64,000 nt of DNA, from the NCBI RefSeq assembly GCF_041956535.1, contig NW_027192213.1:261926-325925 (forward strand). The letters run 5' to 3'. The stretch's first letter is position 1. Each line of letters begins with the position of its first letter. Origin of the DNA: Calcarisporiella thermophila CBS 279.70 (taxonomy: Eukaryota > Fungi > Calcarisporiellomycota). Below, in pieces: positions 24,293 through 29,136 of this stretch. Below the pieces are notes generated by a model that worked only from the letters and a program-made list of their open reading frames with translations, did not search any database and was not told the origin of the DNA. A program made the position numbers and the translations under genes.

Positions 24293-25625
24293 TCAAGGTC
24301 GCCGCTCGAATTGTCCGAATACCAAGTCGTACCCGTTGAATTCGTAGACAATTCTCTCCGTGCGCTTGTATCCCGTAATGGTATCTAACGACCTCGCCAT
24401 GCGTGCTCGTTCGCGATCATGTCGCTCCCAAGCCTCCTCACTCGCGTCGCCGGGAGGGTGCGAGGAGAAAGCCGTGACGCTGAATTTGCCAGGCCGGAAC
24501 ACTCTCGTCACTTCTCGGATCAACGCCTGGACCACCGAGGGTTTCCCTCCAGTTGGGATATTGGTCTCGAAGCTTGCGTAGGAGCAGGCGGGCTCCGGCG
24601 TGACATGAATCGTATAGTAGCCTTGCTTGAGGAGAGCGTTGGCCGAGTAGCCGCAAGGGGTGAACAGGAAAGAATCCACCAGGGCCTTGGGGTAGAGTGT
24701 GTCAAGCCCGGTGTCCTGGTCCACACGGCGTCCCCCCGTGGTGCCGCCCTCTTCCCCAGGACGCTGGTAGAATGGGATCATCGCCTCGGGGTCAAGGTGT
24801 GTCATCAGGATCTCAATCGTTTGATCGTGCTCGTCAGGAACTTGGGGCACCATCTCCTGTGAGTCGTCCTCGCCCGGAGTGGCAATGTACAGGTACCATG
24901 GGTCGCCGCTGTTCGCCCTTCCCACGGTGTAGGCCGCTCCATTCGTAAAGTACGTGTCGAGGCACTCCACCTCCTTCCCCCAATCGCGGTGCGGGTCGAG
25001 CTGGCGTTCAGGGAACATGAACGACTTGCGGGAGTAGAACACGCGCCAAGCGCGCTCAAACCCGCAGTACTCAAGCGCAATCTCAAGAATGCGGGGTACG
25101 GCATGTAGCAGGGTGGTGGTACCACAGGTCTTGAGAATCAGCTTGTGAGGGTACACGAAGAAAGATGACTCACTAAGAATAGGAGAAAAGAGGGTCAGGC
25201 TAAACAGGGGGTCGAGGCCGAAAAGAAAGGGCATGTATCGCTCACCTCAACAAATAGGCATCCAGATGTTCATTTTTGACGACGTTGAGTACCTGGCAAC
25301 GAACAATGGCCAACATCTCGCTCCAAACGCACCGGTCCACCTTTCTCAAACCCTGGCGCGATTGACCCTCCACATCCAGTGTGGCGCGATGGGCAGCGTG
25401 GATGCCGCCACAAAATGGCTCGTCACCCTCGCTATCGCTGCTAAACGTGCTATTGCGAGAACGGACAGTCTCGGCAGCGGAGGGGGCGAACCAAATCTCA
25501 AGCAGTTTTTCGGGCCCCTCGAAAGAACCGGCCTCGTACTCGGCAGGTGGGCAAGCGGAAGTGGGCTCGTACGAAGAGGCTCCCCCGGGTTCCAGATAGT
25601 GATCGTCGCGAATTTCACCAACCAT
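24293..25625 (-). CDS. SPE2: S-adenosylmethionine decarboxylase proenzyme, 2 exons (25625-25246, 25172-24293)
   Basis: SFEGPEKLLEIWF; YLLS|ESSFFV (pyruvoyl self-cleavage site LSESS spans the intron); LILKTCGTTTLL; FTPCGYSAN; YYTIHVTPEP.CSYASFETN. Confidence 0.98.
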
Positions 25626-25769
25626 TTTTTTTCGATAGAGCAGAAAATAGAAAGTCGATTCGATAGCAGTCAAAAGGTGAGGAAAAGGAGTAGGAGGGAT
25701 TGGGGATGGAATAATATAAGTGAAAAATAGTTAAAGGAGATAACGAGATAGTTAATTAATTAGGGCAAG

Positions 25770-25988
25770 TTATGGTGGTTCTTTGGCAGAGTAGTTTTTG
25801 TCAAACGTCGGCAGGACGATGTGAGGGTGGTTGAGTTTGCTTTTACGTCCTACTGGCGACAAAACGGCAAGTGTATCTAACCAGGCGAGCGAGGGGGATA
25901 GGGAGATGAGATTAAGGATGCTATCGAAGGAAGTTAGAAAAATGGAGGCGGAAGGGAAGGTCGAAGAGAAAGCGCGCGGCGAAGCCGT
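25770..25988 (-). promoter_or_regulatory. Candidate non-AUG (ACG-initiated) regulatory uORF ending ..NYSAKEPP* in SPE2 leader
   Basis: Frame open from 26051 with no AUG; actACGgct at 25988 in strong Kozak context; terminal di-proline; stops 145 nt before the SPE2 AUG. Confidence 0.55.
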
Positions 25989-26007
25989 AGTAGTAGTCAA
26001 AACGCAT
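25921..26007 (-). promoter_or_regulatory. AUG uORF MRFDYYYGFAARFLFDLPFRLHFSNFLR* overlapping the EPP uORF
   Basis: Only AUG between 25626 and about 26250 on the minus strand; weak context (catATGc). Confidence 0.45.
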
Positions 26008-26875
26008 ATGAGAGCGGAAGACAGCTTTACAATCAAGTATGTCGCCTTCAAATTTCACGTTTGAAGACGAACGAAAATAAGGTGGGGAGTTGTTGGAAAG
26101 AAAATTGGAAATAGTTAAAAAAAAGGGTAAATATAAACAATCGATTTTTGGGCTTTGGAATTGCTTCTCTTGGGATGAATGGTGAAGAATGGGATTCAAA
26201 AGGCAAGCTTATACGGGTCGAGATGAGTGCTTAATTATTCAAATTATATGACATGATGTGCTTGATCATGTCTTAGGAACAAACTGGAAAGGAGTAACAG
26301 GTTAAAGAATGAAGGAGGGAAAAAATTGCTTGGGTGACGTTTTATATTTGTCCTTGAAAAATATCAGCAGATTTTTTTATACCCAGGAACAATCTATTAG
26401 AAAATTAAACACTCAGCCAAACAACCAACAATTTGAGTGTGAATAGATCAGTACACTAACAATATACAGCGACCTCACCCCATACCACAACCTCTCTCCC
26501 CCATTGCCTATCAGCGGCAAACGCTGCTTGTTTGCGCTTGTGGATTTAAGGAAAGGGCTCGCACCGGGGAGTCTATATTCCCATCCTCCTATCCTTTTTT
26601 CATATTTAGTGGGTGGTTCCTACACTCTTCGGTAGGGTCACCACCGCCATCATCAGATATCGATAATCTCCGTAAAATTCTGGGTGATTAGCTTGGCGGA
26701 GAATACTAAAGAAGCCCCCCCAACTCGAGTAACTCGATTTCCCTTTTTTTTAGCATTTGTCGGAAATGTTTTTTAAGTTAATTAAGCTAGACGTCATCGC
26801 TCATTATACCGTTTTCTAAATCTCTGAAATTAACCCAAAGAAGCCTGTGCGCAAGTCCAAGAAAAATGCGGAAAA

Positions 26876-29136
26876 ATGTCACAGCGGCGACGACGGAACA
26901 ACAATGCATTAAATCAGCGTCTTTGGCGGAGAGAAGGTCAAACCTCATCTTCTGGAGGTGAAGCCGATGTCTCATCGGAAATCGATGACACCCCTACTCC
27001 TACATCATCGCGATCCAAGTAAACATGACGCCTCGATCTGTACTCTCTTTAATTTTCTCCTTACAAGGTCTCCTCTACTCGGCTAAATTAGAATCACCGC
27101 TTATCGCCCTCCCTACTGCCCTTCATTCACCATAGCTTTCAAACTCATCTTGGTAGCTCGCCTCATTGCCGCCCTTACTACTTCAATATCGGACTGCGAT
27201 GAAGTTTTCAACTACTGGGAACCTACTCACTATCTCCAATATGGCTATGGGATGCAAACTTGGGAATATTCACCCGTATATGCCATTCGAAGTTGGGCAT
27301 ATGCGGGTCTGCACGCGTTAGTAGGGATGCTTGTGAGTTTGCTCACAAAAAACAAGGTATAGACCCCATGGAGTTAGCAAAGACGCGTCTTATTCTAATT
27401 TGGGGCCTCTTCTCTATAGGTGCAGACCTTTTATCTTCTTCGTTTGGCATTTGCAACGCTTTGTGCCTATTGCGAAACGGTTTTCTATCGGTCAGTAGTG
27501 ACGGAGCTCAACCCCCATATTGGGCGGTACGTGCTAACTGCACTAATTGTGAGCGCTGGTATGTTTCAAGCTGCGACCGGTAAGAGAGAGATTTTGTGTG
27601 CCATATATCTCTTTTTTTTTTGGCTTTAATTGTGTGGACTATTAGCATTCCTTCCCTCGACATTCTCAATGTATACAACGATGTTGGCTTTTGCCCACTG
27701 CTTGCGCCCCCCGTCGGATATCTCGGGTTCTCGCACTTACCGCGCCATTTTTTGGTTTGGAGTCGGAGCTCTTCTGGGTTGGCCATTCAGCGCCGCGGTT
27801 GGAATTCCATTTGTGTTCGAAGAACTGCTTATGGTCGGCAAAACACACCCCACATCTCCCACCTCCCAACGGAAAAAACCTAGCACGATTGATTGGAGAG
27901 TGAGACGAGTAGTGAGATTTACCATTGCGGTTCTTGCTGGGTTACTTGTCCTGGTAAAAATGCATATACAATTCGCCACGATGGATCTATCTAATAGGAC
28001 TCTATTTATTGCAGCTACCTATCATCTTGGTTGACTACATCTTTTACAAGAAAATCGCCATAGTTCCCCTCAATATTGTGCTATACAATGTATTCGGTGG
28101 GGCGAATCGTGGCCCGGATATCTTCGGCACGGAACCGTGGTACTTTTATATCCTAAATGGATTGTTGAATTTCAACATCCTCTCTTTACTTTCCCTGGCA
28201 AGCATCCCAATATTGGTAAGTGTTTATTAGCCAATGGGTATGAAGAGAATGAGTATTCACATTCTGTAATGCTTTTAATCTTAGTTGGTTTCTCGGTTTT
28301 TGGATCCAAATTGCCTGGTGATATCTTCTGGTACAGCCAATCCAACCACCCTCCTTACTCTCAAGCTGCTTCCTCTCTACATTTGGATGGGTATTTTCAC
28401 ACTTCAGTCGCACAAGGAAGAGCGCTTTCTCTTCGTTGTTTACCCGCTTATATGTTTGAATGCTGCTGTTGCCCTCTTCTTGCTTCGCGGACTTCTACAG
28501 CGAGTTGCGGGCAAACTCAATATTTCCTCCTACCGACTTCTCTCAACATTTACCGCGTCAATATTGCTGCTTTCCGCAGTGCTCTCGATATCCCGAATCG
28601 TCTCCCTCTATTCGCATTACCATGCACCCCTCGAGGTGTATGAGCACTTTTCTCTTAAAGAGTGGCCGGCCTTTGTCCAACGCAATATGACCACTCAGAA
28701 CGAGGAGGTGAATGTTTGTGTTGGCAAGGAGTGGTATCGTTTCCCATCCCACTATTTCCTCCCTCATGGAACGCGACTTCGGTTTCTTCGTAGCGAATTC
28801 CGAGGCCTACTGCCTGCCTATTTTGCCGAAGGGGAAAGTCGAAGGGATGGTACCTCAAGACTACCCCAGTGGAAAATGAATGATGTTAACCGAGAGGAGA
28901 TGGATCGATATGTGCCCGTGGAGGAGTGTACATACCTAGTGGATTTCGATACCGGGGTGGAGACGAAACTCGAGCCACGCTATGTGAATGATGCGAATTG
29001 GGAACGTGTCATTTGTAAACCATTTTTAGATGCCTCTCGGACGCCGAGGCTCTCGAGGGCTTTTTATCTTCCTTTTAATTCAAGGACGAAAAAATGGGGC
29101 GATTACTGTTTATTAAGACGGCAAACACGAGGCTGA
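26876..29136 (+). CDS. ALG9: Dol-P-Man-dependent alpha-1,2-mannosyltransferase ALG9, multi-exon
   Basis: ISDCDEVFNYWEPTHYL.YGYGMQTWEYSPVYAIRSWAY; AFLPSTFSMY; GWPF; QSHKEERF; VCVGKEWYRFPSHYFLP. Confidence 0.97.

What the first reader, a model, noticed from the sequence alone, without database searches (positions are those of the whole stretch)
25770..26051. Non-AUG uORF ending in EPP-stop in the SPE2 (AdoMetDC) leader: candidate polyamine-sensing translational switch
Seen: a putative leader of about 550 nt (TATAAG at 26213-26208) holds only one AUG but has a 93-codon stop-free frame with a near-cognate ACG in optimal context (actACGg, 25988; TTG at 26051 is an alternative). It encodes ...GRKSKLNHPHIVLPTFDKNYSAKEPP* and stops 145 nt before the main AUG. 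Known: polyamine-pathway mRNAs are controlled by arrest-peptide uORFs (mammalian AMD1 MAGDIS, plant AdoMetDC tiny/small uORFs, the AUU-initiated AZIN1 uORF with a PPW motif, PS-stop uORFs), where high polyamines inhibit eIF5A at proline motifs and ribosome queuing boosts weak-start initiation. Inference: this is a lineage-specific PP-stop version of that feedback on spermidine synthesis.
Basis: partly seen in the sequence, partly recalled or inferred. Interest (0 to 1): 0.8.

Follow-up and report, generated by a model that had tools for sequence, protein, structure and literature searches.

The report
Conserved AUG uORF in SPE2 leader
The long non-AUG frame ending in Pro-Pro-stop upstream of the fungal S-adenosylmethionine decarboxylase gene is no longer than chance and is not conserved, but it overlaps a short AUG-started upstream reading frame whose peptide is kept almost unchanged across three fungal phyla and is the likely translational brake on spermidine synthesis.

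Summary
The window is from Calcarisporiella thermophila. The gene downstream is single-copy AdoMetDC (SPE2), on the minus strand with its AUG at 25625.

The frame is not special, though:
- 27% of dinucleotide shuffles of this G-poor leader give an open stretch as long.
- Its tail matches nothing in 12 orthologous leaders.
- In 4 of 6 comparable taxa that frame holds a stop where its proposed starts would lie.

ATG 26007 to TAG 25921 encodes 28 codons, MRFDYYYGFAARFLFDLPFRLHFSNFLR*.
- The same uORF precedes AdoMetDC in Basidiobolus, Jimgerdemannia, Umbelopsis, Lichtheimia and Rhizopus, with a divergent form in Phycomyces.
- The LPFRLHFSNF block is invariant while 9 of 10 third codon positions vary.
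- The AUG context is always weak, the stop is always followed by C, and the length stays at 26-29 codons.

I read it as a nascent-peptide stalling uORF that represses SPE2 translation, probably in response to polyamines. That mechanism is inferred, not shown.

Side finding: other relatives carry a different, ATG-less conserved frame ending in PP-stop. PP-stop control therefore exists in this gene family, but the Calcarisporiella frame cannot be shown to belong to it. The scan had already noted the AUG uORF on this same stretch (s1-610620).

The parts
25921..26007 (-). Conserved-peptide uORF: ATG 26007-26005, 28 sense codons (MRFDYYYGFAARFLFDLPFRLHFSNFLR), stop TAG 25923-25921
   Evidence: Translation. 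The same uORF lies upstream of AdoMetDC in six other taxa. It is the only one of six frames open in all taxa compared.
25930..25959 (-). Invariant peptide core LPFRLHFSNF (uORF codons 17-26)
   Evidence: All 10 residues are identical in six taxa while 9 of 10 third codon positions vary. Variable columns by codon position are 7/4/16 of 17, Fisher p = 2e-5.
26004..26013 (-). uAUG with a conserved weak context (ctcatATGc): never A at -3, always C at +4
   Evidence: Contexts in seven taxa. Codon 2 is R, H, Q or L, always starting with C. The main AUG context is aaaaaaATGg.
25918..25926 (-). Last sense codon, stop and following bases: CGA TAG CAT
   Evidence: The stop is followed by C in 7 of 7 taxa and by CAT in 6 of 7. 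The last codon is CGA in all four R-ending uORFs and TCC/TCT before TGA in the three Mucorales.
25770..26051 (-).
   Evidence: Present. Its length is at chance level and it is not conserved.
25770..25778 (-).
   Evidence: One PP-stop per 600 nt appears in 19% of shuffles of this leader.
25986..25988 (-). Near-cognate ACG proposed as the start; it lies inside the conserved uORF, spanning its codons 7-8
   Evidence: No counterpart appears in the aligned orthologous sequences.
25246..25625 (-). SPE2/AdoMetDC exon 1 (main ATG 25625-25623)
   Evidence: Pfam PF01536. The annotated protein P0001 has 419 aa.
25173..25245 (-). Intron (GTGAGC...TTAG); the join restores LLSESSFF, which contains the proenzyme cleavage motif
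   Evidence: Read. The exon lengths add up to the 419 aa of P0001.
24293..25172 (-). SPE2/AdoMetDC exon 2, with stop TGA 24295-24293
   Evidence: Pfam PF01536, 1e-94. Single copy in the genome.
26208..26213 (-).
   Evidence: The sequence is present. There is no transcript evidence. ATG density rises upstream of it.

Best explanation
The SPE2 leader of Calcarisporiella carries an ancient AUG-initiated conserved-peptide uORF at window 26007-25921, minus strand.

Shown here:
- The uORF peptide, above all its C-terminal LPFRLHFSNF(W/L)(R/S)-stop, is under strong purifying selection at the amino-acid level across three NCBI phyla.
- Its length is held at 26-29 codons.
- Its AUG is always in a poor context.
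- Its stop is always followed by C.

Inferred mechanism:
1. Most scanning ribosomes leak past the weak uAUG and translate SPE2 from its strong AUG.
2. Ribosomes that do translate the uORF stall at or near termination, because the nascent C-terminal peptide acts inside the exit tunnel.
3. The stalled ribosome blocks scanning ribosomes behind it. Queuing may also raise initiation at the uAUG.
4. The stall is probably strengthened by spermidine or spermine, giving negative feedback on decarboxylated AdoMet supply, as with mammalian MAGDIS and the plant small uORF.
For: Identity of the gene
- The gene is AdoMetDC and is single copy.

Conservation of the uORF
- It occurs 75-301 nt upstream of the AdoMetDC AUG in Basidiobolus (L012), Jimgerdemannia (L003), Umbelopsis (L002), Lichtheimia (L004), Rhizopus A (L005) and, in divergent form, Phycomyces (L010).
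- In the 17-codon core, variable columns by codon position are 7/4/16 (Fisher p = 2e-5). Synonymous sites are saturated (dS above 1.6 or not computable). dN is 0.03-0.36.
- This is the only one of six frames that is open and conserved in all six taxa: 13 of 21 invariant residues against 6 or fewer in any other frame.
- No consensus RNA structure is predicted and there is no Rfam match.
- The core motif occurs once in the 28-Mb genome.

Start and stop signals
- The uAUG never has A at -3 and always has C at +4. The stop is always followed by C.
- The main AUG sits in aaaaaaATGg.

Precedent
- AdoMetDC mRNAs of animals, plants, algae and Pezizomycotina are controlled by uORFs, some through polyamine-dependent termination stalling (PMC2811004).
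Against: - There is no transcript, ribosome-profiling or reporter evidence. No RNA run was listed, so neither the start site nor translation of the uORF is shown directly.
- The effector is inferred from the gene context alone.
- The peptide has no similarity to any known arrest peptide. It lacks the penultimate proline that Ivanov et al. found in nearly all AdoMetDC uORFs.
- The uORF was not found within 3 kb upstream in 6 of 12 relatives sampled: Podila, Linnemannia, Gigaspora, Geosiphon, Apophysomyces P0003 and Rhizopus B. It is therefore dispensable in some lineages.
- Conserved bases after the stop (CAT), and the invariant CGA last codon, hint at a nucleotide-level or other-frame constraint that this model does not fully explain.
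Confidence: 0.7

Rival explanations
1. The ATG-less frame ending EPP-stop (26051 or 25988 to 25770) is translated from a near-cognate codon. It senses polyamines through eIF5A-dependent Pro-Pro-stop pausing, as a lineage-specific or highly diverged member of a PP-stop upstream conserved coding region.
For: - PP-stop frames are over-represented in the 600 nt upstream of 13 AdoMetDC genes: 7 observed against 1.74 expected, P = 0.002.
- An ATG-less frame ending IPF(H/R)PP-stop is conserved between Apophysomyces and Rhizopus paralogue B (z = 7.0, with 5 synonymous changes in the last 6 codons). A related frame occurs in Podila and Linnemannia.
- Jimgerdemannia has the same geometry as Calcarisporiella: a PP-stop frame at +1 relative to the conserved uORF, ending 20 codons after its stop.
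- Known AdoMetDC uORFs almost always have a penultimate proline (PMC2811004).
- The ACG has A at -3 and G at +4.
Against: - The frame length is at chance level.
- Its tail has no detectable homologue.
- The profile of the four conserved PP-stop frames does not score it, and pairwise scores are z <= 1.2.
- The enrichment of PP-stops is carried by the four related leaders. The remaining leaders show 2 against 0.83 expected, P = 0.2.
- The ACG is not conserved.
- The +1 frame is closed upstream in 4 of 6 taxa.
- The ACG lies 19 nt downstream of a conserved AUG, so ribosomes initiating at that AUG never scan to it.
Confidence: 0.17
2. The two frames are coupled. Ribosomes translating the conserved uORF shift +1 at its stop (CGA UAG C here, UCC UGA C in Mucorales) in a polyamine-dependent, antizyme-like way. 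They then continue in the reader's frame to the PP-stop. In relatives that carry only the PP-stop frame, the two parts have been fused by mutation.
For:
- The last codon and stop are fixed as CGA TAG C or TC(C/T) TGA C, and the following CAT is conserved in 6 of 7 taxa.
- UCC UGA is the classic antizyme shift site (my own knowledge).
- The PP-stop frames of Apophysomyces and Rhizopus B contain FRLL about 8-16 codons before their PII(P/S)xE motif, which loosely recalls PFRLH in the uORF.
Against: - Homology between the two elements is not significant (p = 0.08-0.7), and the nucleotide alignment is ambiguous.
- The +1 extensions in Basidiobolus, Lichtheimia, Rhizopus A and Phycomyces are 7-11 codons long, unrelated to each other, and lack PP-stop. 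In Umbelopsis the extension runs 77 codons without PP-stop.
- No stimulatory structure is predicted.
Confidence: 0.06
3. The conserved block is a DNA or RNA element, such as a promoter or enhancer site or a structured RNA like the Pezizomycotina SDC hairpin, and is not translated.
For: - Some conservation extends outside the coding frame: CAT after the stop, and CCCTG(C/A)TATGC around the AUG.
- An untranslated hairpin controls AdoMetDC in Pezizomycotina (PMC5640933).
Against: - Substitutions show a three-base periodicity, with invariant amino acids and saturated synonymous sites.
- The frame is kept open, with AUG and stop retained, in all seven taxa, while the other five frames are broken.
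- No consensus structure is predicted and no pairs covary.
- There is no Rfam match.
Confidence: 0.04

Closest known systems
Mammalian AMD1 (AdoMetDC) uORF encoding MAGDIS
   Same: An AUG uORF in the AdoMetDC leader whose peptide sequence matters. It acts in cis by stalling at termination and is modulated by polyamines (PMC2811004).
   Different: MAGDIS has six codons and sits 14 nt from the cap, with no sequence similarity. Here the uORF has 28 codons and lies deep in a long leader, with a conserved weak AUG context. Stalling and polyamine response are not shown here.
Plant AdoMetDC tiny and small uORF pair (CPuORF homology group 3)
   Same: A conserved-peptide uORF upstream of AdoMetDC, repressing in a sequence-dependent way, with start-site choice part of the switch (PMC2811004; PMC2075485). 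The overlap of two frames here is superficially similar.
   Different: The plant small uORF has 48-55 codons and ends in Pro-Ser-stop, and its peptide is unrelated. The overlapping partner in plants is a conserved 2-3-codon AUG uORF. Here the overlapping frame is ATG-less and unconserved.
Upstream conserved coding region (uCC) of ODC homologues and AZIN1 (Ivanov et al. 2008, 2018)
   Same: The ATG-less PP-stop frames found in Apophysomyces, Rhizopus B, Podila and Linnemannia look like this kind. Such regions are reported for Zygomycota ODC (PMC2811004).
   Different: The described cases precede ODC or AZIN genes, not AdoMetDC. The Calcarisporiella frame fails the conservation tests. The conserved uORF here is AUG-initiated and has no proline motif at its end.
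Fungal arginine attenuator peptide (N. crassa arg-2, S. cerevisiae CPA1 uORF)
   Same: A fungal AUG uORF of about 25 codons, with a conserved peptide and a weak start context that allows leaky scanning. A small metabolite of the same pathway strengthens a nascent-peptide stall (PMC2811004; PMC5640933).
   Different: Different pathway, effector and peptide. The arginine attenuator stall does not depend on termination. Here the conserved stop context suggests that termination is involved.
Pezizomycotina SDC RNA motif with uORFs upstream of AdoMetDC (Li and Breaker 2017)
   Same: A fungal AdoMetDC leader element that represses translation (PMC5640933).
   Different: The SDC motif is an 11-bp hairpin restricted to Pezizomycotina species. 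No structure or Rfam hit is found here, and conservation is at the peptide level.

Membership tests
Conserved-peptide uORF controlling AdoMetDC (functional class: MAGDIS, plant small uORF) | A short AUG-initiated ORF in the 5' leader upstream of the AdoMetDC start codon | tested here: met
   ATG 26007 to TAG 25921, 295 nt before the main AUG. The same arrangement occurs in six other taxa. That the leader is transcribed is inferred, not shown.
Conserved-peptide uORF controlling AdoMetDC (functional class: MAGDIS, plant small uORF) | Peptide sequence conserved by selection on amino acids, not on nucleotides | tested here: met
   Variable columns by codon position are 7/4/16 of 17. LPFRLHFSNF is invariant with 9 of 10 wobble positions changed. 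It is the only open conserved frame of six.
Conserved-peptide uORF controlling AdoMetDC (functional class: MAGDIS, plant small uORF) | Sequence homology to a described AdoMetDC uORF peptide, or the penultimate proline shared by most of them | tested here: not met
   The peptide ends F-L-R-stop (F-W-R or F-W-S in relatives). It has no penultimate proline (against PMC2811004). The peptide strings are absent from the searchable literature. It is therefore a separate sequence family.
Conserved-peptide uORF controlling AdoMetDC (functional class: MAGDIS, plant small uORF) | Polyamine-dependent ribosome stalling and repression of the main ORF | not testable with these tools
   This needs toeprinting, profiling or reporters. 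No RNA data were available.
   The tail has no counterpart. C-termini of the same frame in six taxa are unrelated. Profile and pairwise tests are negative.
   The ACG is not conserved. The +1 frame has a stop inside the region in 4 of 6 taxa.
   CCA CCA TAA at 25778-25770, with no ATG in the frame. However, one PP-stop per 600 nt appears in 19% of shuffles.
Pezizomycotina SDC hairpin motif | A conserved hairpin of about 11 bp immediately upstream of AdoMetDC | tested here: not met
   No consensus pairs are predicted in the alignment. No RNA family matches at E <= 10 apart from a chance snoRNA hit.

The most novel reading that the evidence does not exclude
Early-diverging fungi may control AdoMetDC with a two-part translational sensor. 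The first part is the ancient AUG uORF, whose conserved stop site (CGA UAG C, or UCC UGA C) would allow polyamine-stimulated +1 frameshifting, as in antizyme. The second part is a downstream frame that ends in Pro-Pro-stop. In Mucorales paralogue B and in Mortierellomycotina the two parts would have become one ATG-less PP-stop frame.
Probability: 0.06. Interest if true: 0.85.

Novelty: new variant of a known kind. Interest (0 to 1): 0.55.

Why it matters
AdoMetDC is the committed step for spermidine and spermine synthesis, and its uORF control is a textbook case of metabolite-sensing translation. The 2010 survey (PMC2811004) lists AdoMetDC uORFs in animals, Pezizomycotina, plants, algae and diatoms. 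It notes a penultimate proline in nearly all of them.

The uORF found here lies in lineages that survey does not list: Calcarisporiellomycota, Basidiobolomycota and Mucoromycota. Its peptide is unrelated and has no terminal proline, and its 10-residue core has stayed invariant across phylum-level divergence. That makes it a candidate new arrest peptide and a further independent origin of uORF control on this enzyme.

It can be tested in tractable Mucorales such as Rhizopus, Mucor and Phycomyces. In those fungi two AdoMetDC paralogues appear to carry different leader elements. That is a natural experiment on how such sensors are divided between gene copies. For the scan, the lesson is that long stop-free frames in pyrimidine-rich fungal leaders are expected by chance, and that the lone AUG deserved the attention.

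Tried and rejected
1. **RNA evidence.** Transcription start, leader introns and expression are therefore untested, and read laying was not used.
2. **Rfam.** A scan of 25400-26700 found nothing relevant. RNAalifold on the uORF alignment predicted no pairs.
3. **Metagenome scan.** A degenerate pattern for the core returned one Rhizopus contig (L017). The other five loci did not carry the uORF. L013, L014 and L018 fall inside or next to genes on bacterial-looking contigs, and L015 and L016 show no AdoMetDC. No new taxa were gained.
4. **Protein word search.** Repeated with 45-residue stop-free stretches, it found nothing, as expected for uncalled uORFs.
5. **Homology of the AUG uORF to the PP-stop frames of relatives.** The profile test was not significant (p = 0.08-0.7), and the MAFFT alignment offered two incompatible registers. 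This is left open.
6. **Membership of the Calcarisporiella frame in the PP-stop family.** The profile gave no hit, the conserved nucleotide motif is absent from the window at up to 3 mismatches, and pairwise z was at most 1.2.
Uninformative, because the competing frames are penalised simply for containing stops.
It resembles the N-terminus ...NYSAEEGCFEGPEK of Mucorales AdoMetDC. I judged this coincidental. The Calcarisporiella main ORF has its own counterpart (PPAEYEAGSFEGPEK), and four shared residues are within expectation for the number of comparisons.
9. **Ivanov et al. 2008 (PNAS).** The paper on ODC upstream conserved coding regions is not held, so the Zygomycota ODC sequence could not be compared.
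11. **Spliced model.** The SPE2 exons were searched separately by reference.
Full report
**Identity of the locus**

The window belongs to Calcarisporiella thermophila. Exon 2 of the gene below the finding is 100% identical to the protein VTP21DRAFT_5676, 419 aa. NCBI places the species in its own phylum, Calcarisporiellomycota.

The gene is S-adenosylmethionine decarboxylase (Pfam PF01536 on both exons). It lies on the minus strand:
- ATG at 25625;
- exon 1 at 25625-25246;
- a 73-nt GT...AG intron at 25245-25173;
- exon 2 at 25172-24293.

It is single copy in the 28-Mb assembly. I searched the exons separately by reference and did not join them. Where a full-length protein was needed I used the database entry P0001. 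The next most similar AdoMetDC in the databases is only 53% identical, so no close relative was available for comparison.

**Check of the observation**

- a frame open from TTG 26051 to TAA 25772-25770, 93 codons, with no ATG in it;
- an in-frame ACG at 25988 in the context actACGg;
- the C-terminus ...PTFDKNYSAKEPP-stop;
- 144 nt between the stop and the main AUG;
- a TATAAG at 26213-26208;
- a single ATG (26007) in the putative 588-nt leader.

The open frame is not remarkable. The leader has only 64 G in 588 nt, so stop codons are scarce. A second frame of the same leader is open for 95 codons. Dinucleotide-preserving shuffles give a longest open stretch of 84 +/- 22 codons, and 27% reach 95. 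A Pro-Pro-stop somewhere in 600 nt arises in 19% of shuffles of this leader.

The scarcity of ATG is mildly unusual: 1 against 4.0 expected (P = 0.07), with 10 ATGs in the next 587 nt upstream. That fits a long leader but does not prove one. No RNA run was listed for this stretch, so the transcription start is unknown.

**Comparison with orthologous leaders**

I fetched the genomic surroundings of twelve AdoMetDC genes:
- Podila and Linnemannia;
- Umbelopsis;
- Jimgerdemannia;
- Lichtheimia, Phycomyces, Apophysomyces and two Rhizopus paralogues;
- Gigaspora and Geosiphon;
- Basidiobolus.

It did show a striking conserved peptide in another frame. ATG 26007 to TAG 25923-25921 encodes 28 codons, MRFDYYYGFAARFLFDLPFRLHFSNFLR-stop.

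The same uORF stands 111-301 nt upstream of the AdoMetDC AUG in Basidiobolus, Jimgerdemannia, Umbelopsis, Lichtheimia and Rhizopus A. A divergent version (...VPFRLHCDYWS-stop) stands 75 nt upstream in Phycomyces. By NCBI taxonomy this spans Calcarisporiellomycota, Basidiobolomycota and Mucoromycota.

**Is it a translated peptide or a nucleic-acid element?**

In the gap-free 17-codon C-terminal core of six taxa, the variable columns number 7, 4 and 16 at codon positions 1, 2 and 3 (Fisher p = 2e-5). The ten residues LPFRLHFSNF are invariant while nine of their ten third positions differ. Synonymous divergence is saturated (dS above 1.6 or not computable), while dN is 0.03-0.36.

Of the six possible frames, only this one is open in all taxa, with 13 of 21 invariant residue columns. 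Each of the other five, including the antisense frame whose wobble positions coincide, carries stops in two to four taxa and has at most six invariant columns.

RNAalifold finds no consensus pairs and Rfam finds nothing. The degenerate core motif occurs once in the whole genome. I conclude with high confidence that this is a conserved-peptide uORF.

**Further conserved properties of the uORF**

- *Length.* It is 26-29 codons in all seven taxa, although the N-terminal half varies in sequence.
- *Start context.* The AUG never has A at -3. Position +4 is always C, although codon 2 encodes R, H, Q or L. The main AUG in Calcarisporiella sits in aaaaaaATGg.
- *Stop context.* The stop is followed by C in all seven taxa and by CAT in six.
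- *Last codon.* It is CGA in all four uORFs ending in Arg, although the other Arg codons of the uORF vary freely. It is TCC or TCT before TGA in the three Mucorales.

From general knowledge, a pyrimidine at -3 is a weak initiation context and stop-C is the weakest termination context in eukaryotes. Both fit a uORF that is entered by leaky scanning and acts at termination.

- Its 49-residue tail downstream of the uORF stop, including PTFDKNYSAKEPP, finds nothing in the six-frame translations of the twelve loci (best E >= 1, at irrelevant places). The only significant match of the whole frame is to Basidiobolus, over the part that overlaps the conserved uORF. That match follows from shared nucleotides.
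- In the same relative frame the orthologues end after 21-91 open codons with unrelated C-termini.
- In Jimgerdemannia, Umbelopsis, Lichtheimia and Rhizopus A the frame contains a stop inside the uORF region. An ORF starting where TTG 26051 or ACG 25988 lie cannot exist there.
- The ACG has no counterpart in the nucleotide alignment.

A role peculiar to Calcarisporiella cannot be excluded.

Counting CCN-CCN-stop in the 600 nt upstream of all thirteen genes gives 7 against 1.74 expected (P = 0.002). All seven frames lack ATG.

Four of them form a real family:
- Apophysomyces (L009, stop at 2900) and Rhizopus B (L011, stop at 2993) share ...FRLL...PII(P/S)xE...V-GF...VQ--IPF(H/R)PP-stop. The local score has z = 7.0 against shuffles, and there are five synonymous changes in the last six codons.
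- Podila (L001) and Linnemannia (L008) share P(I/T)I(S/P)SET...KPP-stop (z = 2.9) and the nucleotide block CCC AYC ATY YCG TCA GAA.

These four are exactly the leaders that lack the AUG uORF. A protein tree puts them in a separate Mucorales paralogue clade and in Mortierellomycotina.

The Calcarisporiella frame, however, is not detected by a profile of these four. It lacks their nucleotide motif and scores at shuffle level against each. Once the four related leaders and the ascertained window are set aside, PP-stops are not enriched: 2 against 0.83 expected (P = 0.2).

Jimgerdemannia resembles Calcarisporiella in having a PP-stop frame at +1 to the uORF. That is suggestive but is a single case. 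I tested whether the two element types are homologous and could not show it.

**Mechanism**

Shown: a translated-looking, deeply conserved AUG uORF with weak start and weak stop contexts, in front of the strong AUG of a polyamine-pathway enzyme.

Inferred, by analogy with MAGDIS, the plant small uORF and the fungal arginine attenuator peptide (PMC2811004):
1. Most ribosomes scan past the uAUG.
2. Those that translate the uORF stall at termination through the conserved C-terminal peptide in the exit tunnel.
3. The stalled ribosome blocks scanning ribosomes and may promote further uAUG recognition by queuing.
4. Polyamines lengthen the stall, so SPE2 translation falls when spermidine is high.

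The effector is a guess from pathway context. Decarboxylated AdoMet, AdoMet or no ligand at all remain possible.

**What is known, and novelty**

[quoted passage not shown] It states that all but the vertebrate and sea-squirt ones carry a penultimate proline. It mentions Zygomycota only for ODC. The Pezizomycotina SDC element is a hairpin confined to that subphylum.

The peptide strings of the present uORF occur in no paper of the searchable library. Targeted searches found no description of AdoMetDC uORFs in Mucoromycota. The library is incomplete, so prior description elsewhere cannot be ruled out.

I class the conserved uORF as a new variant of a known kind. The logic and the gene are the same as in known cases. 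The peptide family is unrelated, there is no terminal proline, and the lineages are not previously listed.

My analysis confirms that the uORF is real but did not test the leader intron that note proposed.

**Verdict**

- The specific interpretation is not supported for this frame.
- The general idea, uORF-based feedback in the SPE2 leader, is supported by a different and much better conserved element that overlaps the finding.

Noticed in passing
L009:2591-2902, L011:2813-2995, L001:2865-2960, L008:2499-2693: ATG-less frames of 31-103 codons ending in Pro-Pro-stop lie 5-307 nt upstream of AdoMetDC in Apophysomyces (P0003), Rhizopus paralogue B, Podila and Linnemannia. They are conserved (Apophysomyces against Rhizopus B z = 7.0, with IPF(H/R)PP-stop carrying 5 synonymous changes), and all four share the motif P(I/T)I(P/S)(S/L)E. 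This looks like a non-AUG upstream conserved coding region for AdoMetDC.
   Followed up: partly
Protein tree of P0001-P0105: Mucorales have two well-supported AdoMetDC paralogue clades. The sampled members of one (Lichtheimia, Phycomyces, Rhizopus A) carry the AUG uORF. The sampled members of the other (Apophysomyces P0003, Rhizopus B) carry only the PP-stop frame. Gigaspora and Geosiphon showed neither element within 3 kb.
   Followed up: partly
window 25918-25926 (-) and the equivalent sites in L002, L003, L004, L005, L010, L012: The last codon and stop of the conserved uORF are fixed as CGA TAG C (four taxa) or TCC/TCT TGA C (three Mucorales). The latter matches the classic antizyme +1 shift site. 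CAT follows the stop in 6 of 7 taxa. This nucleotide-level constraint is unexplained.
   Followed up: partly
L012:2674-2694: In Basidiobolus a six-codon frame, KSLFPP-stop, ends one nucleotide before the AUG of the conserved uORF.
   Followed up: no
This resembles the N-terminal ...NYSAEEGCFEGPEK of Mucorales AdoMetDC proteins. I judged it coincidental, because the main ORF has its own counterpart of that segment.
   Followed up: partly
L003:614-2868: The Jimgerdemannia record carries two overlapping AdoMetDC gene models, starting at 614 and at 947. The uORF-to-AUG distance is 266 or 599 nt depending on the model.
   Followed up: no
window 27150-27630 (+): A divergently oriented gene starts about 1.5 kb upstream of SPE2. 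Its first ORF reads ...NYWEPTHYLQYGYGMQTWEYSP..., which looks like a mannosyltransferase. It sets the outer limit for the shared promoter region.
   Followed up: no
L013:553-579, L014:2205-2231, L018:1020-1046: Exact matches to the degenerate uORF core pattern lie inside or next to genes on bacterial-looking metagenome contigs (in L018, antisense inside a 534-aa ORF). They are unrelated to AdoMetDC and about as frequent as expected by chance for a 38-bit pattern.
   Followed up: yes
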